Assembly (NCBI RefSeq): GCF_006345805.1
Contig: NC_043009.1
Span: 43,710,001 to 43,774,000 of the forward strand
Source: Octopus sinensis
Taxonomy: Eukaryota
Length of the DNA stretch: 64,000 bases
Direction: 5' to 3'
Shown here: positions 272 to 58,953 of the stretch, piece after piece
How positions within the stretch are numbered: the first letter of the stretch is position 1
Layout of the letters: each line of letters starts with the position of its first letter
Program-made: the position numbers and the translations under genes
The notes under the pieces: model-generated
Seen by the model: only the letters and a program-made list of their open reading frames with translations
Database searches by the model: none
What the model was told of the DNA's origin: nothing

Positions 272-690
272 TATTGTGTTGGCAACTAAGTTAGCATGGT
301 TTTTTAAAGTTTTTGAATCTATTTTTTTTTTTAGAATTCTATTTTTGAATCATTTTGGAATCTATTTTTTTTTCTAGTTAATTTTAGTTAATTTTTGTTT
401 ATTTTAAGATCATGGAAATGGAATGTCAAGTTAAGAAAAACGAGCATTTTCGACACCTTTTTTTTCTTCTTTTAATCAAGGTTCTATGGCCGCAAAAGCT
501 GCTCGCGATATTTGTGCTGTGTATGGAGAGGGTTCCATAGCTGAAAGAACCGCTCCTGATTGGTATGCCAAGTTCAAAAATGGAAATTTTGACCTCAAAG
601 ACACACTTCGTTCTGGTCGTCCATTTGAGTTCGATGAAAAGCGATTAAACCAACTTTTGCACGTAAATTCACGTCAAACGACATGGGAAC
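272..690 (+). mobile_element. Mariner (Mos1/SETMAR-type) 5' fragment: left TIR plus transposase N-terminal HTH
   Basis: TA-TTGTGTTGGCAACTAAGTT TIR-like start at 272. ATG at 412 gives MEMECQVKKNEHFRHL, then after a frameshift KAARDICAVYGEG...WYAKFKNGNFDLKD..RSGRP, typical of mariner DNA-binding domains. Truncated at about 690. Confidence 0.85.
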
Positions 691-1017
691 CATGGCATAT
701 ATATATATATATATAATATATATATATATAATATATATATATGTGTGGGTGTGTATGTGTGTGTGTGTGTGTATGTGTTCATCATTCATATATGTATAGC
801 GTATGTATATGTGTATGTATGAATGTATGTATGTGCGTATGTATATATACAAGGCGAATCCTAACTCGTAGCTATAATGTGTAAACATGAGGTAGTACTT
901 CAGTATCTAAATATCGAATAGAATAGCAGAATACAAGGAATACGGTGAGGGACAGCGTTGGCAAAAAGTAATACTGAAAAAATTGAAATATCTTTCATGT
1001 TGAGAGGAAGAAGAGCG

Positions 1018-8705: not shown

Positions 8706-9048
8706 AGGAGAGAAGGAGAAAGTTAAGGAATGGTCGTTGAAGAACTTCCAGCACGAAGAAATTTGTTCAGCTTTCAAATTGACAGAAGATAGAATGAGAA
8801 GATGAGTGAGTCATTGGCATAAAAATAGAAGGAATTCGAAGAAGTTGAAAGAGATTTGTTTTGGCGAAGACAGGAGTCTGTGTGTGTGTGTGTGTGTGTA
8901 TGTGTGTATGTGTGTGTGTTTGTGTGTGTGAGTGTGTGTGTGTTGTTAGCGCTGTTGAAGTAATTAACTGCTTAATCATGTGATTGTTTCTACTCACAGA
9001 AGAACCGATTCCATTATTCCAATTCTTACTATTTCAGATATATCTTTA

Positions 9049-9265
9049 AGGTGGCGAGCTGGCAGAATCGTTAGCGCGTCGGACAAAATGCTTAGCGGCA
9101 TTTCTTCCAACTTTGCGTACTGAGTTCAATTTACGCCGAGGTCGATTTTTGCCGTTCATCATTTCGGGGTCAATAAACTAAGTACCGGTTGAACACTGAT
9201 GTCGATTTAATCGACTTAATTCCTTCCCCCGAAATTGTTGGCCCTGTGCCAAAATTTGAAACCGA
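9049..9265 (+). mobile_element. Family B tRNA-derived SINE with 19-bp target-site duplication
   Basis: Head GGTGGCGAGCTGGCAGAATCGTTAGC, B-box-like GAGTTCAA. TATTTCAGATATATCTTTA occurs at 9030-9048 and 9266-9284. Confidence 0.9.
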
Positions 9266-9843: not shown

Positions 9844-10004
9844 TGTGAAGTATATTTGCCTTCTCAATATGGCTAACCACTAAGGGTGGATGTTACTGTA
9901 GCTTGTAGCCCAGGAGAACATCTTCTCCAGCTGGCTATTTACACACTTTCTGTAACATCCACCCTTAGTGGTTAACCATATTGAGATGGCAAATATACTT
10001 CACA
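9844..10004. mobile_element. 161-bp hairpin element (MITE-like)
   Basis: 53-bp inverted arms 9844-9896 and 9952-10004 with 2 mismatches; inner stems TAGCC/GGCTA and GGAGAA/TTCTCC. Confidence 0.7.
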
Positions 10005-12299: not shown

Positions 12300-13765
12300 T
12301 TTTTATCTAGTTTCAGCTCACAAGCTGTGGCCATGCTGGGGCACCGCCATTTGGTGTTGCTACATGATTTTACTTCACGAATGCTTTTTAGCAATTGCCA
12401 TTTGGTGCATGAGAGAGTTCGATGCAGCTGCCCTTATCTGCACCTCCTGCCGTGAAGTTGGTTCATCTGGGACACCTGACAAGAAGAGATCCAGTTTTAT
12501 TTTAAAGACATCTGCATCCACCCCATGCAGGTCTCTTAGGTTCTTCGGGAGGATATTGAAGAGATGTGGGCCTCGGAAGCCCAGGCTATCACAGTATCTT
12601 GTCCTACATCTTGATGGCAAATTTGAAGTCCTTGGCACTATGCAGTGGCGCCCAGTTCTGGCATTTGTGTAACTCTCGATGCCAAAGTTTGGGACAAGTC
12701 CTTCTAGGATCTTCCAGATGTATATTATGGTATTTCTTTCTCGCCTACGCTTTAAGGAATAGAGTCTCAATCTCTTGAGTCTTTCCCAATAGCTTATATG
12801 CTGCACAGAGGCTATCTTCTTCGTGTAGCTTCGTTGGATCGCCTCAAGTTCTGTGATTAACTTGACACTGAGAGCAATAGTCAAAGTGGCTTAGGACAAG
12901 TGTCCTCCAGAGGACCATCATGGTTTCCTGGTCTCTTGTTCTAAAGGTTCTAAGAATCCATCCGGTCAGCCGCCTACATTTCATTGCCAATTTAGCAACA
13001 TGCACATGAAAGGTTGCATCATCACTCATGTAAATGCCCAGGTCTCGCACTGATTGTGCCTCTGGGATTGCAATCCCTCCAGGTCCAGTGTATTTATTGG
13101 GTATTGCATTTAGTTTTGCATGCTGATAGCATAAAGCTTGAAACTTTTCAGCATTGAACTGCATGCTATTCTTTTCAGCCCTCTTGTATATTTTGTCCAG
13201 CTCACATTGCAGGTGCTTAGTGTCTTCAGGGTTCTGTATTGCCTGTGAAACTTTTGTATCATCTGCATAACTTGTGATCGTGGCTCTCTGCGTGGCTGAG
13301 GGCATGTCTGAGAGGGCCATTATGAACAGTAGTGGTCCCAAAACAGTGCCTTGAGGAACACCGCTCACTATTTGCGTGTTAATGGAAGTGACCCCATTGG
13401 CTACTACCACCTGACTCCTATCCTTCAGAAAGTCTGAAGCCATTCTCCCAATTTCCAACTATGCCAAGATCACGCAGTTTGTGAACATATCATTCCATGA
13501 TCGACTTTATCAAAGGCCTTTGCAAAGTCGAGATATATCACTTCCACATTTGAATGGTTGAGCAGTCGTTTCAGCACCCAGTCATAGTGTTGTAGGAGCT
13601 GAGTTAAGCAGCTTCTTCCTGGTCGGAAACCATGTTGGGTGTCAGGCAGCAAGTCATTTTCTTCAAGGAAGGTGATTAGTTTCCTTCTGGTTATTCGTTC
13701 CATGACCTTGCTGATGTGTGAGGTCAGAGAGATAGGTCTGTAGTTCTTGGCCTCCGCTCTGCTAC
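12300..13765 (-). mobile_element. 5'-truncated CR1/L2-group LINE ORF2 (RT core to 3' tail), frameshifted
   Basis: NYRPISLTS, QHGFRPGRSC, LDFAKAFDKVDH, GVPQGTVLGPLLF, YADDT, RDLGI, LYSLKRRRER across ORFs 13470-13703, 12844-13458 and 12375-12884; 3' tail at 12310-12348. Confidence 0.95.
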
Positions 13766-13908
13766 ATGTTTTGTTTGCTTAATCAATTAACCTCCTCCAA
13801 TGCGAAAAACAATAGTTGCTCCCAAAACAAAATGCACAAAAGGCATTGCAACAACAACAACAACAACAACAGCAGCAGCAGCAACAACAACACCAACAAC
13901 AACAAAAA

Positions 13909-16077: not shown

Positions 16078-16511
16078 AAAGCAGCGAACTGGCAGAATTG
16101 TTAGCATGCCGGATAAAATGCTTAGCAGTATTTCGCTCGTCGTTACGTGCTGAGTTCAAATTCCGCCGAGGTCGACTTTGCCTTTCATCCTTACGGGGTC
16201 GATAAATTAAGTACCAGTGAAACACTGGGGTCGATGTAATTGACTAGTCCCCTCCCACCAAATTTCAGGCCTTCTGCCTCCAGTAGAAAGGATTATTAAG
16301 GTAGCGAGTTGGCAGAATCGTTAGCATGCGGGGCGAAATGCTTAGCGATATTTAGTCCGTGGCCTATGTTCTGAGTTCAAATTCCGGCAGGACGACTTCG
16401 CCGTTTATCTTTTCGTGATCGATAAATTAAGTACCAGTGAAACACTGGGGTCGATGTAATTGACTAGACCCCACCCACCAAATTTCGGGCCTTGTGCCTT
16501 CAGTAGAAAGG

Positions 16512-20661: not shown

Positions 20662-21954
20662 TATCAATTATTAATTAGTTCTTCCCTCTTTACATTACAC
20701 ATGCACATAGATACACAAAGGCACGTAGTTAAAGTTAAGTTTGTATATACATATATACATTCATATATATTTGCATATTTGTGTTTATCTGTATGTATAC
20801 ATGCATACATACAAACATACATACATACATACATACATACATACATACATACATACATACATGTGTGTATGTGTGTCTGTGTGTGTCTGTATATATGCGT
20901 ATACGCGCATTTATATATACATGTTAAATAAACGCGTGAATTGGAATTAATAAATTAAATATTAATATGTAATTAGGTATAAAATAATAATAATATAATT
21001 GATAAATTCAGTACGACACTGAGACGTACAGTCTTAATATATATGTACACCGTGGAGGCGCAATGGCCCAGTGGTTAGGGCAGCGGACTCGCGGTCGTGG
21101 AATGGCGGTTTCGATTCCCAGACCGGGCGTTGTGAGTGTTTATTGAGCGAAAACACCTAAAATTCACGTGGTAGCGAACCCTGCTGTATTCTTCCACCAC
21201 AACTTTCTCTCATTCTTTCTTTCTGTTTCTGTTGTACCTGTAATTTCAAAGGGCCAGCCTTGTCGCACTCCGTGTCACGCTGAATCACCCCGAGAACTAC
21301 GTAAAGGTTACACGTGTCTGTGGAGTGCTTAGTTACTTGCACGTTAATTTCACGGATCAACTGAAACCCTCGTCGTCGTAACCGACAGATTACCACGATA
21401 TGTACACATATTATTGACACACCACACACACACCACATATATATATGTGGTGTGTGTATATGTGTTTGTGAATATTTATATATTACATCTCCGCCGAAAT
21501 TCCTTCTTTCCTACAAACGTTGGCCTATAAATGTTCAAAAGAAGCAATAATGTCATCAGTCTTTTACTAGTCTCCGAGAACCTGCAAAAGCTATGGGCTT
21601 TGTCCCTTCTTCCAGACCCAGCAAAAAAACAAAAAAAGCTAAATATGATAATAATTTAAATTATAGGGACCAGCATGATGGTGGGGTTAAGAAGCTCGCT
21701 TTGTAACCAAGTGGTTGCGGGTTCAGTTCCACGCGGTGTCCTCTACTATAACCCCACTCACTAGCCAACCAATGTCTTGCGTGTGAATTTGGTAAACGGA
21801 AACTGCGTGGAGGCCCGCGAAAGTTTAAGTCGTATGGAACAGAATCAAACTGTTTCAAATAATACATTTGACTTCTACTAATTATGTTGAGTGCCTTTTT
21901 GTTTCTTTATTCCCCACTCATATATATATATATATTATATATAAACAACACACA

Positions 21955-21986
<32 letters not shown>

Positions 21987-22718
21987 TCAATTATTAATTA
22001 GTTCTTCCCTCTTTACATTACACATGCACATAGATACACAAAGGCACGTAGTTAAAGTTAAGTTTGTATATACATATATACATTCATATATATTTGCATA
22101 TTTGTGTTTATCTGTATGTATACATGCATACATACAAACATACATACATACATACATACATACATACATGTGTGTATGTGTGTCTGTGTGTGTCTGTATA
22201 TATGCGTATACGCGCATTTATATATACTGTTAAATAACGCGTGAATGGAATTAATAATTAAATATTAATATGTATTAGGTATAAAATAATAATAATATAT
22301 TGATAAATTCAGTACGACACTGAGACGTACAGTCTTAATATATATGACACACCCGTGGAGGCGCAATGGCCCAGTGTTTGGGCAGCGGACTCGCGGTCGT
22401 GGAATGGCGGTTTCGATTCCCAGACCGGGCGTTGTGAGTGTTTATTGAGCGAAAACACCTAAAATTCACGTGGTACGAACCCTGCTGTATTCTTCCACCA
22501 CAACTTTCTCTCATTCTTTCTTTCTGTTTCTGTTGTACCTGTAATTTCAAAGGGCCAGCCTTGTCGCACTCCGTGTCACGCTGAATCACCCCGAGAACTA
22601 CGTAAAGGTTACACGTGTCTGTGGAGTGCTTAGTTACTTGCACGTTAATTTCACGGATCAACTGAAACCCTCGTCGTCGTAACCGACAGATTACCACGAT
22701 ATGTACACATATATATTG

Positions 22719-22750
<32 letters not shown>

Positions 22751-23247
22751 GTGTGTGTGTATATGTGTTTGTGAATATTTATATATATACATCTCCGCCG
22801 AAATTCCTTCTTTCCTACAAACGTTGGCCTATAAATGCTCAAAAGAAGCAATAATGTCATCAGTCTTTTACTAGTCTCCGAGAACCTGCAAAAGCTATGG
22901 GCTTTGTCCCTTCTTCCAGACCCAGCAAAAAAACAAAAAAAGCTAAATATGATAATAATTTAAATTATAGGGACCAGCATGATGGTGGGGTTAAGAAGCT
23001 CGCTTTGTAACCAAGTGGTTGCGGGTTCAGTTCCACGCGGTGTCCTCTACTATAACCCCACTCACTAGCCAACCAATGTCTTGCGTGTGAATTTGGTAAA
23101 CGGAAACTGCGTGGAGGCCCGCGAAAGTTTAAGTCGTATGGAACAGAATCAAACTGTTTCAAATAATACATTTGACTTCTACTAATTATGTTGAGTGCCT
23201 TTTTGTTTCTTTATTCCCCACTCATATATATATATATATATATAAAC

Positions 23248-26879: not shown

Positions 26880-27300
26880 TATGTGTTTCTTTACTACCCA
26901 CAAGGGGCTATACACAGAGGGGACAAACAAGGACAGACAAACGGATTAAGTTGATTACATCGATCCCAGTGCGTAACTGGTACTTAATTTATCGACCCCG
27001 AAAGGATGAAAGGCAAAGTCGACCTCGACGGAATTTGAACTCAGAACGTAACAGCAGACGAAATACCTATTTCTCTACTACCCACAAGGGGCTAAACACA
27101 TAGAGGACAAACAAGGACAGACAAACGGATTAAGTCGATTATATCGATCCCAGTGCGTAACTGGTACTTAATTTATCGACCCCGAAAGGATGAAAGGCAA
27201 AGTCGACCTCGACGGAATTTGAACTCAGAACGTAACGGCAGACGAAATACAGCTACGCATTTCGCCCGGCGTGCTAACGTTTCTGCCAGCTCGCCGCCTT
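26880..27300 (-). mobile_element. Head-to-tail dimer of family B SINE
   Basis: Full unit followed by a 5'-truncated unit beginning GGTATTTCGTCTG. Confidence 0.9.
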
Positions 27301-27882
27301 TCATCAACCCAAGATATATAACAAGAACCAAGAATTTAAAGACACAAGAATGGCTATGTGATTAAGATGTTTGTTTTTGCAAATTCGTGGTTGTATGATC
27401 GATTCCAACGTGGGGTAGTCTGGGCATGTCATTTACCATAGTATCACATCGAGCGCAAAATTTCTTAGCAGAATATGGCACGCGGGGAACGTCGATTATT
27501 TACTCTGTACGTCCACCCTGATGTTGTTTGTTCGTTCGAAGCTCTAAATCTCCAGAAATTTTTTAAAAATTAAAATTTCTGGATGCTGCTGTTTAATGAA
27601 GTTTTCTTATATTGTCGTTGAAGGCTCGAAATAGGGAGTAATTAACAGTCGACAACTGAAGAGGGGTTAAACGTCTTGAGGTATTTTGTCCCGTACTTAT
27701 CTCTCTTTATGTGTTTGTGTATTTTTCACTCGTTGGTGATGTCACCTATACTTGATGTATTTTATATATATACATACACACAAACACACACACACATATA
27801 TATATATAACCTTTTATTATAGCCTGAGCCGACCAAACCCTTGTAACCGGGATTGGTTGATGGAAACTGAAAGAAGCCTGTC

Positions 27883-28335: not shown

Positions 28336-29395
28336 ATTAGGGAAATCTTATACGCTAACGATTGCGATCTAGCCAGTCACTCTGAAACGGGCCTGCAATC
28401 TCTTGTATCTACATTTGACACAACTTGTGATGATTTTGGCTTGACCATCTACTTGAAAAAACCCCCCGAAAAACAGTTGTAATGCTTCAACCTGCATGTG
28501 GTACAGTTTGCAACCCCATTAAAAATTTCGTTAACTGTAAGTTACTTTTGGTTGTTGACTCTTTCTTTTACCTTGGAAAGCTCTGTGCAAAATGATGGAA
28601 ATCTGGACACAGAAATACATCTGCGAATTCATAGGGCAGCACAAGCATTTGGTTATTTGAAGTCATGCATTTGGCGCTAACGACATATAAATAACAAGAC
28701 AAAATTGATTCTTTACAAATCGTTTGTCTTACCATCCCTGTCGTATTCTTCTGAAACATGGACGTGTTATGCAAGACATTTCAAACTGTTAGAACAATTC
28801 CACCAAAAATGCCTTCGGTGCATTTTAAACATTAAATGGAGCTTTTTTCTACTCCAGACACATATGTTTTTGCGACAGCAGGCATCACTTTAATTAAATC
28901 AATGATTCTGAAAAATCAAATTTGATGGTCTGGCTATTTTGTTCGAATGGTGGATGGGATGAACGCATACCCAAACAGCCGTTTAATTGCGAACTTGTAG
29001 AGGAGAAACGCAATTGGTGTAAACCTAAAAAGAGATTTAAAGACGGCATAAGGACTACCATGAAGTCACTTGGAATGGATCCAAAGGCCATTGAAATCCT
29101 TGCTTCTGATCGAGCTGGATGGCGAACAAAAACGTGGAGTGGAGTGAAAGCGTTTGAGGAGGCTAGGATAACACATGCAAGACTCAAGAGAGATTTAAAG
29201 AAGAATGTTGCGATCGAGAAGGTGAATCTCAGTGACCTTTTTGTGTGCACAGTTTGAGGACCCATGGAAAACGAACCTCGAACCTCCACCAACTATTCTG
29301 CCTATGTATCTGTGCACACCTTTGAATGCCGTGTATGTCATAAGGTCTGCAATTCTAACGTAGGCCTCAAAAGACATTTCAAAATACACAAAAAT
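28335..29395 (+). mobile_element. RTE (BovB-like) LINE ORF2 3' half, degenerate, with C-terminal C2H2 motif
   Basis: LIREILYANDCDLA (YADD decayed), LYKSFVLPSLSYSSETW, EQFHQKCLRCILNIKW, DERIPKQ, KKRFKD, DRAGWR; in frame after a TGA, FECRVCHKVCNSNVGLKRHFKIH. Confidence 0.92.
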
Positions 29396-29481
29396 GCTAG
29401 GCGGAATTTCTTCTGGATCATTGCGTTCTAAGTTCAAATCACATCGATATCAGCTTTGGCTTTCATCCTATTGGGGTTATG

Positions 29482-29585
29482 CTGGCCTCCTAAAACTCTT
29501 TCACTCCACTCCACGTTTTTATTCGCCATCCAGCTCGATCCGAAGTAAGGGTTTCAATGGCCTTTGGATCCATTCCAAGTGACTT
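29482..29585 (-). repeat. Inverted duplicate of RTE segment 29063-29166
   Basis: 104-bp reverse-complement match with under 10 mismatches by eye. Confidence 0.92.
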
Positions 29586-29886: not shown

Positions 29887-30083
29887 CTTCTAGTACTTGC
29901 ACAAGGCCTGAGATTAGGAGAGTGGGCTTCGATTACTAGTTAACTTGTTGACTGGTACTTCATTTTATCGACCCCAATAGGATGAAAGGCAAAGCTGATA
30001 TCGGTGTATTTGAACTCAGGATGTAATGACCCAGAAGAAATTCCGCCTAGCATTTTGTACAATGTGCTGAAAATTTTTGCTTT

Positions 30084-30130
<47 letters not shown>

Positions 30131-30778
30131 ACAAACACAAACGGTCATGAGCCGAATACCCCTAACCACTAAGCCACGCGCCTTCATACTCAGAACGTAA
30201 ATGCAGATGAAATGCTGCTAAGCATTTTGCCCGGCGTGCTAACGATTCTGTCGGTTCGCCACCTTCATCCGCTTCTTAGTAAGAAATCCTTTGACTTCGT
30301 ACGCGAAATTCTAGGTAAAAAGTAAAATTAAAAAATATTGCATTGAGAGAATAGAAAATGGTGGAGGTGGGGGAGGGGTGAACCTATTCTGTGTTTGATC
30401 AGGATTTACCTGGAGTTAAACAAGAATCGTAGCCATCAAAACAATTCTGCTCTTTTATTGGGAAAATTTTTTTCTCTTTCCTATTTCTTTTAAACGGGTT
30501 AAGTGAAGAGGTAAAGAAGAGTGCATTTAACTTCGTTTAGGAATTATCGAGGAAGTGTTAAGTATCGTTGACAACACTCAAATTGATGAGTTAATATAAA
30601 ATAAAATAAAAAAGAGGCGGTGGGGAAAATTGCTAAGTCCAGGTTAAGAAGTGAAAATATAAAATTGCTGAACGGTGGTCAACAAATGAAAAGAAAGAAA
30701 TATCTCCTACCATTTTATCCATTAAAAAATATTAGCGATAGAAATAGTGTTAATACCGAGAGGTAATATCAAACGTAT

Positions 30779-30869
30779 ATGTTCTATTGGAACAAGCTAT
30801 ACTGTGGTAGATACCCAAGATACGGTAGATCGCGTATTTACAACGGTATAGCTTGTACTAACAGAACAT
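30779..30869 (+). ncRNA. Candidate pri-/pre-miRNA-like hairpin
   Basis: 36-bp stem (30779-30814 with 30834-30869) with 3 mismatches, 3 G-U pairs and a 19-nt loop, in sequence with no other copy seen in this window. Confidence 0.45.
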
Positions 30870-31890
30870 CCACGTTTCAGTGGGGATAGATATTTTATCG
30901 ATTGTACGTTGTATTTGAAGTTATTGTTTTGGGTTAATTAAGGAATATTTTTACATTTTAATTTTTTTATTGGGTTTCAGTGCTGGTGGTGGTGGTGGGG
31001 CCATGTTGGTGGTGGGAGGACTTTGGAGGATTCAGTTGAAGAAATCGACTCCAGTAGTTATTTCTATAAACCTGGTACTAATTCTATTGGTCTCTTACTG
31101 GGCCGCTGAGATAGGTGGACGTAAAAAAACCAACTCCGGTTGCCAATCGGTGATAGAAAAACAAATACGTGCACACATGCACTCACTCACACACACACAC
31201 AAACTTATTTGTACGACGGGTTTCTTTCAGTTTCCGTTTAGCAAATCCACCCACAAAGTTTTGGTCGGTTCCAAGCTATAGCAGAAGACACTTGTCCAAG
31301 ATTACATGGAAAGCAAATCTCTTACCACAACAATGCCTTTTATTTCATTATACGATAAATAAATGAAGAGATGTTAAGAATCAAAATAAGAAGAATAATA
31401 TAATTCAATTTTAAAAAGTGAGATAGACCCTCAAATTGGTGGATAAAATGGAAGAGGAACCACGGCTCTGCGATAATCTAGCCTACGAGATCACCATACA
31501 TTTCCACTGCACTTATTTCACTCATAATTCTTGGATCTACCCGAAATTACGGGCAGAAGAGAACATCTGTTCATAACTCTACGTAGTACAGATTAAAACC
31601 CTGAATGTAAGGGTACGCGATTGTGAAGCGAACTTCTTAAAGGCATGGTCAGGCTTGCTCTAAAAGTTTCACTACATTTCTGCTAAAATATCGTCCAATT
31701 ACTTGTATAATTGAAAGCAATTAGACACAATTAAATGGTTAGTTTGTAATTTATTTGCACACCACAGCTCTATGTTACTCTATACATTAAAACTGACGTC
31801 GTCGAGTTTAGAAGGATTAGCTTATTATTATAATTGTTATTATTATTATTATTGTTATTATTACTATTATTATTATTACTATTATTATTG

Positions 31891-35678: not shown

Positions 35679-35984
35679 TACGCGAACGGAGTCGTCCTTG
35701 GGCTAAACGACAACAACAACAGAAGCAGCAGCAGCAGCAGCAGCAGCAGCAACGACAACTAACGACTCAAAGATGAATACAAATTCACATCCCAGATGCC
35801 AAGCACCCTTTATGAATTCAACCGTGGCAATTTACCAAGTAGCCCAAAAGAAAGGAGTTACATATATATATATATATATATTTCACAGGGTATGTAGAGG
35901 ATGTAATTTTCTGCGAACTATGAAAGTGTATATTGCTTCATGCTTCAGTTATTTAATATTTTTCAGCATAAAGTCGATGAGCTG

Positions 35985-36547
35985 GCAGAAACGTTAGCAC
36001 GCCGGGCGAAATGCGTAGCTGTATTTCGTCTGCCGTTATGTTCTGAGTTCAAATTCCGCCGAAGTCGACTTTGCCTTTCATCCTTTCGGGGTCGATAAAT
36101 TAAGCACCAGTTACGCATTGGGGTCGATGTAATCGGCTTAATCCGTTTGTCTGTCCTTGTTTGTCCCCTCTGTGTTTAGCCCCTTGTAGATAATAAAGAA
36201 ATAAGAAATAAGAAACGTTAGCACGCCGGGCGAAATGCACAGCGGTATTTCGTCTGTCTTTACGTTCTGAGTTCAAATTCCGCCGAAGTCGACTTTGCTT
36301 TTCATCCTTTCGGGGTCGATAAATTAAGTACCAGTAACGCGCTGGGGTGGATGTAATCGGCTTAATCCGTTTGTCTGTCCTTGTTTGTCCCCACTGTGTT
36401 TAGCCCCTTGTGGGTAATAAAGAAATAAGAAATAAGAAACGTTAGCACGCTGGGCGAAATGCACAGCGGTATTTCGTCTGTCTTTACGTTCTGAGTTCAA
36501 ATTCTGCCGAGGTCGACTTTGCCTTTTATCCTTTCGGGGACGATAGA
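35985..36547 (+). mobile_element. Head-to-tail trimer of family B SINE
   Basis: ~225-bp period; units joined by AAAGAAATAAGAAATAAGAAACGTTAGC; third unit truncated. Confidence 0.9.
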
Positions 36548-36965
36548 TTTTTTTTCTTTTCCATTGTGAACTGTATGGATGGCTTTGTTGAGTTCACATG
36601 ATCTAACAGCACTTGGACACCTTCCTGGTGGGGCCAGAGTATGAAGGTGTCATCAAAATATCGCAGTCATAGGGTTGGTTTTAGTGGTGTTGATCCTAAA
36701 GCCAAATTCCTATATATATCGGCTATTATCGGTGATAATGGCGAACCCATAGGGAGACCCTCTTCCTGTCGATATATATCAGTGTCCATACTGAAGTAGG
36801 TAGTTTCTACACAGAAGGTTAACATTTCCATCAAGTTTCTTATTGGTATATAAGTGCATTCTTTCAGATGGGTGTCTGTCACTAGTTTTTCTTGAATCAC
36901 CGATAGTGCTTCACCAGTTGCGGTTTTAGTGAACAGACTTATCACATCTAGACTAACCATCAAGA
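36548..36965 (-). mobile_element. Penelope-like element RT fragment
   Basis: VSLDVISLFTK, YFSMDTDIYRQEEGLPMGSPLSPIIADIY, then past a TGA LRYFDDTFILWPH...VNSTKPSIQFTMEK: PLE-type RT motifs. Confidence 0.9.
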
Positions 36966-37799: not shown

Positions 37800-38393
37800 A
37801 AACGACACTTCAAAACGGCGGGGGGGGGTCGTTCAATTCGCGCGGCACCCATTTCTCAAGTATTTTTGTCTTTCCAATTTCTTTCAAGTGGTTGGAAATT
37901 GTCATATACGTTACGTGTAATTCAGAAGAAAGCTCTCGAACAGCTGTGCGTGGATTGGCTTCCACTAAGGCTCTAAGTTGATCGTTGTCAACATCCGATG
38001 GCCGTCCACTACGCTTATCATCTTCAAGACTCTCGTCTTGAAGATGATAAACTACGAAATTTCTTGAACCACCATTGTGCTGTACGTTCATTAGTGGTTC
38101 CTGCGCCAAACGCATCGTTGCTATCGCAAGTTGTTTCAGCAGCTTTTCGGCCTAGCTTGAACTGGAATGAGGAAAAATTGTGCGAAATTGTTTTTTGTCC
38201 ATATTGTATTCAACGTTCCGGAAAAAATGGCCTAATTATTCAAAAACAAAAAAGTGTAACACGATTAGATAGAGCGAAAAACGGCTTTAAAATGATATAT
38301 AAAGTCAAAGTAATTTAACGAAACTTAATTTGAAAATACATAATTTAAAGCCAAAATTAAAAATTCCGCAAGAACTTTCTTGACAACCTATTA
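37800..38393 (-). mobile_element. Mariner 5' half (TIR plus transposase N-terminus)
   Basis: TIR TAATAGGTTGTCAAGAAAGTTCTTGCGG; ESLEDDKRSGRPSDVDNDQLRALVEANPR...KWVPREL. Confidence 0.9.
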
Positions 38394-39105: not shown

Positions 39106-39913
39106 AACCTCCCACCCTAAATACACCAAGCTTTCCATCTCCTATTCCAATTCCTCCGTCTACACAGGGCTCTGCAGTGATGACCATGAATTTGAGATTC
39201 AGTCTCACCTCATGGCTCGTCACTTCATCCTACGTGGATATTCTCTCACCTATATCCACACCGCCCTTGCCAGAGCACTTCCGTGGACCGTGCATCTACT
39301 TTCTACCCCCGCACACGTCCCGCCGTCTCTCGTTTCCCGTTTCCCCTCACCTACCACCCCACCACCCTACCTCTCTAGTCCAACCCCTCCACTTCCCATA
39401 TTTTCCCTAACCGATTCCTCCCCTCCTTCAAACGAGCCCACAACCTACGAGACCTCTTGGTCCACAGCTTCTTCCCTAACCCAACCTCCCAACCCGGCTC
39501 GGTCCCCCGGCTCCCGCCCACGCTGCCGAACTTGCCCTTACCTCTCCAAAACCAGCCTCCTCACTGGCACCCATTATTCACCCTATCATATCACCGACTC
39601 CTTCACCAGCACTTTTACTAATATAATCTACTGCATCTCCTGCTCTCTCTGCCCTTTTCTATACATCGGGCAAACGGGACGCCGCTTGGCTGACCGGTTC
39701 GCAGAACACCTCCGAGATATCCGACTCGGCAATGATACCCCGTTCTCGCGCCATTTCCGCTCTATCGGTCACTCTTTGCAACACCTGTCTGTGTTCGGAT
39801 TGTCATTGCACAGGTGCCATCCGGACTCCCGTTTGTGCCGTGAACAGGGATTAATCTTCTCTCTTCGCTTCTTTGCGTCACATGGGCTCATCTCTCCTCC
39901 CCTCTTCATCTAA
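39102..39913 (+). mobile_element. Penelope-like (Neptune-type) element: RT thumb, Cys-rich linker and GIY-YIG endonuclease
   Basis: LRLHR/LCSDDHEFEIQSHLMARHFILRGY; alternative frame PLTYHP...FKRAHNLRDLLVHS; CRTCPY...NIIYCISCSLCPFLYIGQTGRRLADRFAEHLRDIR...CREQGLIF. Confidence 0.92.
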
Positions 39914-49966: not shown

Positions 49967-50029
49967 AATTAGATGTTGTAATGCCATCAGACCTTTCTTA
50001 AAGGTCTAATGGTTTTACAACATCTAATT
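49967..50029. repeat. 63-bp near-perfect palindrome
   Basis: 30-bp arms, 3-nt loop CTT, 2 mismatches and 1 G-T. Confidence 0.9.
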
Positions 50030-50349: not shown

Positions 50350-50415
<66 letters not shown>

Positions 50416-50604
50416 GCACACATGGCGAAATGCTTAGCAGCATTTAATCCGTCTTTACGTTCTGAGTTCAAATTCCGCCGAGGTCGACTTTGCCCTTCAT
50501 CCTTTCGGGGGTCAATGAATTAAGTGCCTGTGAAGCACTGGAGTCGATCTGATCGACTGGTCCCCTCCCCACAAATTTCAGACCTTGTACCTTTAGTAGT
50601 ATGG

Positions 50605-51808: not shown

Positions 51809-52373
51809 CGAGGGTGAGTCAAAAAGTAATGCCATTTTGTTTAGGACAGGTATAATTACCAACACAGGAACATGTATCATACATCAAAATGAAGCTGGTC
51901 TTCTGTGGATCACATCCCTACTACTCAACATAGTCACCGTTTCTTTCACTAGCAATGTTTCACATTCGAATGAGAGCATGTATCCTGGCCCCATAAAATT
52001 CTGTTGACTTCTTTGAGCCTCTTCTTCACTACTGTTTTCACTTCCTCGTCACTGGAATAATGTCTGCCTCTCAAACCCTCTCCCATGGGGCTGAAGAGAT
52101 GATAGTCCAGTGACGATGATATTCCAGTGACGAGGAAGTGAAAACCTGTAGTCAAGAAGTAGCTCAAAGAACAGTCAACAGAATTTTACGAGGTAGGGAT
52201 ACATGCTCTCATTCGAAGGTGGAACATTACTATTGAGAGAAACGATAACTATGTTGAGAAATAGGGATGTGATCTACAGAAGACCAGCTTCCTTTTGATG
52301 TATGATACATGTTCCTGTGTTGGTAATTATACCTGTCCTAAACAAAATGGTATTACTTTTTGACTCACCCTCG
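51809..52373. mobile_element. Palindromic non-autonomous mariner built from two 3' ends
   Basis: TA TSD at 51807-51808 and 52374-52375; ~250-bp inverted arms 51809-52059 and 52120-52373, each encoding the transposase C-terminus. Confidence 0.9.
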
Positions 52374-57737: not shown

Positions 57738-58953
57738 CATCCCATAAGTAATGCTGTTTTTCAAAATTAAGATTAACAAAATTCTTTTTTAATTTAAAAT
57801 ACACTCTCCTTCATTTTCTATAATGCTCTTCGTCCGTGACAAAAAACATTTCTCCAGTATTGTTTTGACCTCATATACATAATTCATTTTTTTTCTGTCC
57901 AAACGATTTTGAAGACTGCGAAATAAATGATAATGAGATGGGTCAATGTCCGACAAATTATGGTGGGTAGGTCATCGTTTCCCGTTCAAAATGCTCTAGC
58001 CTTTGAAATGTCACCCTCGCTGTATGTGGCCGAGCATTATCGTAATGAAAGAACACCTTTCGTCTTGAAATCAAAAATGGTCGTTTTTCTGCTAGCGCTG
58101 ATTTAAGCCGCTCAAGTTGCTCGCATTAGATTTCCTTTATTATCGTTTGGTTTGGGTTTAAAAATTCAAAGGGGACTAAACCTTTCATATCCCACCAAAT
58201 AGATAACCCCTTATGTGGGTGAAGACCTTCTTTAGCCTGGGGTGTCGCTGTTTCTCCTTTCCCTACCCACCGTCTTCGGCACTTGACATTTTTATAGAGA
58301 ACCCATTTCTCATCACCAGGCACTATTCGGTCGCAAAAGGGTTCATTCGTGAGACGTCCCAGCAAAGAAGAGCACATGTTTACTCTCTGCACACAATTAA
58401 ACTAGGAAAGTTTTGTGAGGAACACGTTGACCTAATTTGCTGACTTTTCCGATAGCACACAGGTGTCGATGAATGGTTGAATGATCAAATCCAAGCTTTT
58501 TAGTTAGTTCCTCAGCAGTTACGATGAGATTTTGTTCCACCAGGGTTTGCAGAACTTCCTCGTCGAGCTCTACACATCTTCCAGGACGAGGCTCGTCTTC
58601 TAGGCTGCAGTTTGCGATCCGGAATTTTTAGAACCGCCGTTGACACTGGCTTACACTTATTGTCCGATCCCCATATATTGCATTAATATTCCTCGCACTT
58701 TCCGTTGCGTTGTTGCCTTTATTGAACTCATAAAACAAAATATGCTGAATATGCTCCTTTGTCACTTCCATTATAGCTTTGAAAATAACTGTTAAAATCG
58801 AACTGCACTCTTCAAAATTTGTACTAAGAATAAGTACAAGGTAAAATTACTACCTCCATTTATAGCAAATTGATGCAGGTAGTTTATGCCACCCCTTCCG
58901 ACTTTTAATTCATGCGATCGAAAAAACCGCATTATTTATTAGATGACCCAATA
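57732..58953 (-). mobile_element. Full-length degenerate mariner (~1.22 kb)
   Basis: TIRs GGGTCATCCCATAAGTAATGC / GCATTATTTATTAGATGACCC within TA repeats; GDEKW, YDNARPHTA and SDIDPSHYHLF (DD34D triad, third D lost). Confidence 0.92.

What the first reader, a model, noticed from the sequence alone, without database searches (positions are those of the whole stretch)
30779..30869. Isolated hairpin with pri-miRNA architecture
Seen: a 36-bp imperfect stem made of a 12-bp basal segment (ATGTTCTATTGG/CTAACAGAACAT), an A-A mismatch and a 23-bp upper duplex, with a 19-nt loop and a UG at the stem base (30780-30781). Three substitutions are G-U-compatible on the + strand. It lies in about 650 bp of non-repetitive sequence. 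A plausible duplex is 5p AAGCUAUACUGUGGUAGAUACC and 3p UAUUUACAACGGUAUAGCUUGU. I do not recognise either as a known family. Known: coleoids have many lineage-specific miRNAs. Inference: candidate novel miRNA; the alternative is a decayed palindromic MITE.
Basis: partly seen in the sequence, partly recalled or inferred. Interest (0 to 1): 0.72.

Follow-up and report, generated by a model that had tools for sequence, protein, structure and literature searches.

The report
Single-copy palindromic hairpin, miRNA status untested
The hairpin is really there and has the right shape for a microRNA precursor, but it is one of four similar small palindromes in this repeat-rich window, nothing beyond shape supports a microRNA, and it is most likely an ordinary, slowly decaying inverted duplication.

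Summary
30779-30869 folds into a 36-position stem (30 Watson-Crick, 3 G-U, 3 mismatches) with a 19-nt loop. The + strand gives -41 kcal/mol (z -7.9) and the - strand -35 (z -6.9). It is the core of a 107-nt indel-free palindrome (30771-30877), single-copy in the window, lying in about 760 bp of unique sequence between SINE-like repeats.

The miRNA reading could not be tested: no small-RNA data and no genome of the source organism or a relative were reachable. What could be tested does not favour it:
- No Rfam family matches; the best hit is mir-965 on the minus strand, 21.8 bits against a cutoff of 43, with a different seed.
- Of three processing motifs checked, only the basal UG is at its canonical position.
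- The arm differences (4 transitions, 2 transversions; G-U split 3:1 between strands, p = 0.63) look neutral.
- None of 12 plausible seed-match 8-mers occurs in the held target tables of the published Octopus vulgaris miRNA set.
- The window holds three other unrelated single-copy palindromes, against none in 20 shuffles.

The MITE alternative is not supported either: no target-site duplication and no second copy. The best reading is a neutral local inverted duplication (confidence 0.58). A true miRNA has a probability of roughly 0.07. Interest is low.

The parts
30771..30877 (.). Full imperfect DNA palindrome: 53-nt arms around a centre at 30824, 12 substitutions, no indels
   Evidence: the repeat finder I21; per-position comparison; palindrome census
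30779..30814 (+).
30815..30833 (+). 19-nt apical loop. It is itself a more decayed part of the palindrome (4 of 9 positions differ) and contains no UGU/GUG motif.
30834..30869 (+). 3' arm of the 36-position stem
30794..30815 (+). Hypothetical 5p product AAGCUAUACUGUGGUAGAUACC. This is geometry only, with no expression evidence.
   Evidence: 2-nt overhang geometry; UG at -14 only for this start
30835..30856 (+). Hypothetical 3p product UAUUUACAACGGUAUAGCUUGU. This is geometry only, with no expression evidence.
30270..31030 (.). Unique stretch of about 760 bp holding the hairpin, bounded by dispersed SINE-like repeats at 29948-30269 and 31031-31308

Best explanation
A single-copy local inverted duplication (a DNA palindrome of about 107 bp) lying in TE-rich sequence where no host exon was recognised.

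It was made at the DNA level, most plausibly by a fold-back or template-switch event during replication or break repair. That origin is inferred, not shown. Since then it has accumulated only point substitutions (12 in 53 arm positions, no indels).

It has no dedicated small-RNA function. If the region happens to be transcribed, either strand would fold into a 36-44 bp dsRNA stem. Such a stem could be bound incidentally by dsRNA-binding enzymes (Drosha/DGCR8, Dicer, ADAR). That would be a by-product of the palindrome, not evidence of a gene.
For: - This is the signature of a DNA duplication rather than of a shaped RNA.
- Both strands fold almost equally well.
- The arm differences look like a neutral spectrum. 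In the core there are 4 transitions and 2 transversions. The transitions give G-U on the + strand 3 times and on the - strand once (p = 0.63). The excess of changes in the centre is not significant (p = 0.18).
- The same window holds three more unrelated single-copy short-spacer palindromes (9844-10004, 49967-50029, 52034-52145), against 0 in 20 shuffles. Such duplications therefore recur in this genome, at about 1 per 16 kb here.
- No Rfam family reaches threshold.
- There is no apical UGU/GUG, and CNNC sits at +11/+14 rather than +16 to +18.
- None of 12 plausible seed-match 8-mers appears in the held O. vulgaris target tables.
- The base rate is low: 164 annotated miRNA genes in O. vulgaris give about 0.004 expected per 64 kb.
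Against: - The geometry is close to the Drosha optimum: about 36 stem positions, a 19-nt loop, only symmetric 1x1 mismatches, and a UG at -14 for one plausible cut.
- It is the only one of the four palindromes with that geometry.
- The + strand is 6 kcal/mol more stable than the - strand.
- A neutral origin does not exclude later recruitment as a young miRNA.
- No expression or conservation data were available, so the absence of function is inferred from base rates, not shown.
Confidence: 0.58

Rival explanations
1. A bona fide lineage-specific miRNA gene, or a young proto-miRNA, transcribed from the + strand. Drosha would cut about 13-15 bp above the stem base and Dicer near the loop. The result would be a 5p/3p duplex like the reader's. 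The 3p (5' U, weaker 5' end pairing) would be the likelier guide.
For: - The stem has 36 positions, the loop is 19 nt, and 20 of the 22 positions of the proposed 5p can pair with the 3p arm (18 Watson-Crick, 2 G-U), one is the G.A mismatch and the last lies in the loop.
- z = -7.9.
- UG lies at -14 for a 5p start at 30794.
- It is single-copy in the window and sits in unique sequence.
- Octopuses are reported to have gained 90 novel miRNA families of unknown source (PMC9699675).
Against: - No known family matches.
- There is no apical UGU/GUG, and CNNC is off position.
- The G-U asymmetry is not significant, and the substitution pattern looks neutral.
- The candidate seeds are absent from the held O. 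vulgaris target tables.
- The prior is very low given the many comparable hairpins.
- The stem continues beyond the supposed basal junction.
- The taxon is unverified.
Confidence: 0.07
2. A decayed palindromic MITE or foldback transposon copy. It would be one of many dispersed copies in the genome, inserted by a transposase and now degenerate.
For: - It is palindromic over its whole length.
- The window is full of transposon fragments, including mariner-type transposase pieces that could mobilise MITEs.
Against: - No target-site duplication is found at any symmetric boundary. The only hit is the self-complementary ACGT that is part of the palindrome, and there are no TA flanks.
- No second copy or half-copy exists in 64 kb, even with 7-nt words.
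- It shares no similarity with the other palindromes.
Confidence: 0.2
3. A structured element inside an intron or UTR of a long transcript, acting as a dsRNA substrate for ADAR (A-to-I editing) rather than for Drosha and Dicer.
For: - A 36-44 bp near-perfect duplex is long enough for dsRNA-binding domains (own knowledge).
- The octopus study notes abundant hairpin ADAR substrates in introns and 3' UTRs (PMC9699675).
Against: - No exon or transcript evidence exists in the window; every ORF with a Pfam match is a TE fragment.
- Even if it were edited, that would be an incidental consequence rather than a selected function.
Confidence: 0.1

Closest known systems
Canonical animal pri-miRNA hairpin (MirGeneDB-type annotation criteria)
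   Same: An imperfect stem of about 35 bp, an apical loop over 10 nt, at least 16 paired positions in a 22-nt duplex, a strongly negative z-score, and a basal UG for one cut register.
   Different: - There is no read evidence, no conservation evidence and no family match.
- UGU is absent and CNNC is off position.
- The stem is a perfectly symmetric, indel-free palindrome that continues below the supposed basal junction and into the loop.
Short-spacer inverted duplications (DNA palindromes) from fold-back or template-switch events
   Same: Strict symmetry about one centre, no indels, both strands fold, single copy, no TSD. Three further examples lie in the same window.
   Different: It is older and more diverged than the other three (82% over 44-nt arms against 90-100%). 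The mechanism of origin is inferred, not shown.
MITEs and MITE-derived miRNAs (e.g. human mir-548 from Made1; own knowledge)
   Same: A palindromic element of about 100 nt that can fold into a miRNA-like hairpin.
   Different: No TSD and no other copy in the window. Genome-wide copy number was not testable.
mir-965 (Rfam RF02520)
   Same: On the minus strand the 3' arm shares GUAUAGCUU.U.CC with the family consensus.
   Different: The score is 21.8 bits against a gathering score of 43, with E = 0.22 for only 1.7 kb searched. The seed region differs (CACAGUA where I recall AAGCGUA for miR-965-3p; only part of that recalled seed is visible in the alignment). I take this to be a chance match.

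Membership tests
Animal miRNA gene | Hairpin with at least 16 complementary positions within the ~22-nt duplex and a loop of adequate size | tested here: met
   In the proposed 5p/3p duplex, 20 of the 22 positions of the 5p can pair (18 Watson-Crick and 2 G-U), one is the G.A mismatch and the last lies in the loop. The loop is 19 nt.
Animal miRNA gene | Reads from both arms with 2-nt 3' overhangs (Drosha and Dicer signatures) and 5' homogeneity | not testable with these tools
No small-RNA data are available.
Animal miRNA gene | Stem of about 35 bp flanked by single-stranded basal segments | tested here: inconclusive
   The stem has 36 positions, but after a 2x2 internal loop six more pairs (AAACGU/ACGUUU) continue the stem.
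Animal miRNA gene | Processing motifs: basal UG at -14, apical UGU/GUG, CNNC 16-18 nt downstream (positions from own knowledge of Auyeung 2013 and Fang & Bartel 2015) | tested here: inconclusive
   UG is present only for a 5p start at 30794. There is no UGU/GUG at the apical junction. CNNC lies at +11/+14 for that register. These motifs are neither necessary nor sufficient.
Animal miRNA gene | Conservation of the hairpin, arms more than loop, in related species | not testable with these tools
   No cephalopod or other related genome was reachable. ORF look-ups and protein searches around the locus found nothing. The metagenome scan gave only chance single-arm hits.
Animal miRNA gene | Membership of a described family (sequence and structure, or seed) | tested here: not met
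   - Rfam: nothing at gathering score in the whole window; the best sub-threshold hit is mir-965.
- 12 seed-match 8-mers are absent from the held O. vulgaris tables.
- A literature search for the sequences returned 0 papers.
- MirGeneDB itself could not be searched.
MITE / foldback transposon | Terminal inverted repeats | tested here: met
   This is trivially met by the palindrome.
MITE / foldback transposon | Target-site duplication flanking the element | tested here: not met
   No direct repeat of 4 nt or more lies at symmetric boundaries, other than the self-complementary ACGT that is part of the palindrome. There are no TA flanks.
MITE / foldback transposon | Multiple dispersed copies | tested here: inconclusive
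   No other copy exists in the 64-kb window. The rest of the genome was not available.
mir-965 (RF02520) | Score at or above the Rfam gathering threshold, with a conserved seed | tested here: not met
   The score is 21.8 bits against 43, and the seed region is not conserved.

The most novel reading that the evidence does not exclude
The hairpin is a young, lineage-specific miRNA or proto-miRNA caught soon after birth from a local inverted duplication. This window holds four such palindromes in 64 kb. If that density holds genome-wide, it would be the raw material for the large, unexplained gain of miRNA families reported in coleoid cephalopods.
Probability: 0.06. Interest if true: 0.45.

Novelty: new member of a known kind. 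Interest (0 to 1): 0.18.

Why it matters
As it stands, very little: it is one more small palindrome in a repeat-rich genome.

If small-RNA data showed precise processing, it would add one lineage-specific miRNA. More usefully, it would be an example of miRNA birth from a local inverted duplication. The octopus miRNA study states that the source of the novel loci is unknown (PMC9699675).

The practical lesson for the scan is that in this genome a stable, well-shaped hairpin is not by itself a useful miRNA indicator. Comparable palindromes occur about every 16 kb in this window.

Tried and rejected
**Known families**
- Rfam was run at permissive E-value around the locus and at gathering score over the whole window. 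Only a sub-threshold mir-965 hit appeared, on the minus strand and with a different seed. I rejected it as chance.

**Literature**
- The arm sequences occur in no paper text.
- Arm 8-mers and 12 seed-match 8-mers are absent from the held supplements of Zolotarov et al. 2022. Data S3 lists targets in random order and names many Ovu-Novel miRNAs. The negative therefore has some weight, but the files are truncated and cover only miRNAs with conserved targets.
- No supplements are held for the MirGeneDB 3.0 paper.

**Related DNA**
- The metagenome scan gave three single-arm chance matches with no hairpin. The viral scan gave none.
- Exact look-ups of five ORFs in or beside the hairpin found nothing on record.
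- A homology search with the ORF 100 bp downstream found nothing.

**Taxon**
- The LINE RT ORF found only metagenome contigs, at 46% identity over nearly the whole ORF and at most 75% over about half of it, and no cephalopod name.
- A SINE-derived ORF found nothing.
- Sample accessions of the nearest RT hits are not mentioned in any held paper, and SINE 17-22-mers are in no paper.
- The source organism is therefore not identified by any tool. The resemblance of the SINEs to octopus repeats is only my recollection.

**Mirtron**
- I considered this by eye and rejected it. GU at 30781 and AG at 30863-30864 would leave a recessed 3' end. The 5' splice site is poor, the CUAAC lies only about 2 nt from the AG, and there are no flanking exons.

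**MITE**
- The TSD search was negative.

Full report
**Observation**

- On the + strand the RNA minimum free energy is -41 kcal/mol. Shuffles average -16.2 +/- 3.2, giving z = -7.89, and none of 200 shuffles does as well.
- The - strand gives -35.2 kcal/mol, z = -6.85.
- The hairpin remains the dominant structure when 251 nt are folded on either strand.

A position-by-position table covers 36 stem positions:
- 30 Watson-Crick pairs.
- 3 G-U pairs: 30789/30859, 30803/30845, 30810/30838.
- 3 mismatches: A.C at 30786/30862, A.A at 30791/30857, G.A at 30806/30842.
- A 19-nt loop (30815-30833) and UG at 30780-30781.

The proposed 5p (30794-30815) and 3p (30835-30856) are mutually consistent with 2-nt 3' overhangs. 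That follows from the geometry of any symmetric stem and is not evidence of processing.

**What the object is at the DNA level**

The stem is the core of a larger palindrome. Arms 30771-30823 and 30825-30877 are 77% complementary with a single base between them (I21). All 53 arm positions lie on one antidiagonal, so the arms differ by 12 substitutions and no indel:
- 2 of 8 outer positions differ.
- 6 of 36 core positions differ.
- 4 of 9 central positions differ. The excess in the centre is not significant (Fisher p = 0.18).

The 'loop' and the sequence below the 'basal junction' are thus decayed parts of the same inverted duplication.

In the core there are 4 transitions and 2 transversions. 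The transitions give G-U on the + strand three times and on the - strand once (two-sided p = 0.63). Neither strand is significantly favoured, and there is no sign of selection to keep RNA pairing.

**Copy number and surroundings**

- A 23-mer of the arm with up to 3 mismatches hits only the two arms themselves.
- BLAST with 7-nt words finds no other copy or half-copy in the 64 kb.
- The hairpin lies in a unique stretch, 30270-31030. This is bounded by dispersed SINE-like repeats at 29948-30269 and 31031-31308 and by microsatellites.
- No direct repeat that could be a target-site duplication flanks the element at any symmetric boundary. The only 4-mer is the self-complementary ACGT that belongs to the palindrome, and there are no TA flanks.
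- The window as a whole is microsatellite-rich and TE-rich eukaryotic DNA. It contains RVT_1 reverse-transcriptase fragments, mariner Transposase_1 and HTH_48 fragments, and a weak GIY-YIG match. No host exon was recognised.

**How special is such a hairpin here?**

A sliding 100-nt fold of both strands found 98 loci at or below -30 kcal/mol. Most are microsatellites. By my reading of the printed structures (not a separate computed count), about a dozen are non-repetitive unbranched hairpins.

A census of non-low-complexity palindromes (arms at least 20 nt, at least 75% identity, spacer at most 80 nt) found four in the window:

| Coordinates | Arms | Identity | Spacer |
|---|---|---|---|
| 9844-10004 | 53 nt | 96% | 55 |
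| 30771-30877 | 44 nt | 82% | 19 |
| 49967-50029 | 30 nt | 90% | 3 |
| 52034-52145 | 26 nt | 100% | 60 |

For 52034-52145 the inverted similarity continues further out with a 2-nt shift. Twenty block shuffles gave none. The four palindromes are unrelated in sequence, each is single-copy in the window, and none has a TSD.

Local inverted duplications are therefore a recurrent feature of this genome, at about one per 16 kb in this window. It is also the only one whose stem and loop dimensions resemble a pri-miRNA.

**Tests bearing on the miRNA reading**

- Known families. Nothing in the window reaches an Rfam gathering score. At permissive thresholds the best hit over the hairpin is mir-965 on the minus strand, at 21.8 bits against a gathering score of 43 and E = 0.22 for 1.7 kb. 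The shared letters (GUAUAGCUU.U.CC) lie outside the seed, which differs. I treat it as chance.
- Processing motifs (positions from my own knowledge of the literature). UG at -14/-13 is present only if the 5p starts at 30794. There is no UGU or GUG at the apical junction. CNNC starts at +11 and +14 downstream of the 3p end rather than +16 to +18. I saw no mismatched GHG in the lower stem by eye. One motif of three is uninformative.
- Published octopus miRNAs. Zolotarov et al. 2022 (PMC9699675) report 164 miRNA genes in 138 families in O. vulgaris, 90 of the families novel. They state that the source of the novel loci is unknown. Their held supplements list seed-match 8-mers for the Ovu miRNAs, with thousands of rows in random order and many distinct Ovu-Novel names. 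None of 12 8-mers appears there. These 8-mers cover 5p starts 13-17 and 3p starts 55-58 on the + strand, and the 3p on the - strand. The 8-mer for a 3p start at position 59 was not searched.
- Limits of that negative. The files are truncated, they cover only miRNAs with conserved targets, and the window's species is unverified.
- Literature. Sequence strings of the arms occur in no held paper.

**What could not be done**

No cephalopod or other related genome is reachable with these tools.
- The metagenome scan returned three contigs with single-arm chance matches and no hairpin. The viral scan returned none.
- Exact look-ups of five ORFs in or next to the hairpin found nothing.
- A homology search with the adjacent 103-aa ORF found nothing.
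- The taxon itself stayed unidentified. The LINE RT ORF matched only anonymous metagenome or Logan contigs, at 46% identity over nearly the whole ORF and at most 75% over about half of it. A SINE-derived ORF matched nothing. Neither the sample accessions nor SINE oligomers occur in any held paper.
That is recollection, not a test.

**Weighing**

With 164 annotated genes in a genome of about 2.7 Gb (size from my own knowledge), 0.004 miRNA genes are expected per 64 kb. The window offers four palindromes and about a dozen stable non-repetitive hairpins.

I allow generously for unannotated species-specific miRNAs and for the good geometry of this hairpin. On that basis I put the probability that it is a Drosha/Dicer-processed miRNA at about 0.07.

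The MITE alternative needs copies and a TSD that are not seen. It survives only because the rest of the genome is unseen (0.2).

The best-supported reading is a neutral, single-copy local inverted duplication (0.58). If the region is transcribed, either strand would form a 36-44 bp duplex that could incidentally attract dsRNA-binding enzymes, including ADAR. Nothing shows that it is transcribed.

**Verdict**

- The interpretation cannot be decided with the data at hand and is disfavoured by base rates and by the neutral-looking substitution pattern.
- It is an ordinary member of a known kind of feature, a short DNA palindrome.
- The most novel reading not excluded is a newborn miRNA arising from one of many local inverted duplications. 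If shown, it would bear on where the coleoid miRNA expansion came from.
- The decisive steps are small-RNA read mapping, genome-wide copy number, and orthologous-site comparison.

Noticed in passing
window 9844-10004: A single-copy palindrome with 53-nt arms at 96% identity and a 55-nt spacer. Its RNA MFE is about -62 to -68 kcal/mol for 120 nt. It has no TSD and abuts a (CA)n microsatellite.
   Followed up: partly
window 52034-52145 (extends to about 51975-52205): Perfect 26-nt inverted arms with a 60-nt spacer. Inverted similarity continues about 60 nt further out on both sides with a 2-nt shift, so this is a larger inverted duplication.
   Followed up: partly
window 49967-50029: A 63-nt near-perfect palindrome (27 of 30 arm positions, 3-nt spacer). 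It is single-copy and has no TSD.
   Followed up: partly
window 29063-29172 and 29476-29585: Inverted pair of 110-nt copies (93% complementary, 303 nt apart), overlapping an ORF that looks like a LINE C-terminal tail. Further inverted arms (29391-29477 and 29971-30056) suggest two head-to-head TE/SINE insertions.
   Followed up: no
window 35966-36593: Three tandem copies, spaced about 224 bp, of a tRNA-like SINE fragment that recurs at least 12 times in the window (for example 27191-27305, 16084-16405, 9048-9158, 50413-50499, 30188-30269).
   Followed up: no
window 21664-21906 and 22968-23210; 21160-21510 and 22338-22778: Pairs of ORF translations about 1.2-1.3 kb apart. The first pair is identical throughout (81 aa). 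The second pair shares an identical stretch of about 90 aa and differs at its ends. This indicates a recent tandem segmental duplication.
   Followed up: no
window 12847-13778 (-), 58129-58846 (-), 435-713 (+), 37813-38151 (-), 39212-39910 (+): TE protein fragments: RVT_1 reverse transcriptase, mariner Transposase_1 and HTH_48, and a weak GIY-YIG match (Penelope-like?). No host-gene exon was recognised anywhere in the window.
   Followed up: partly
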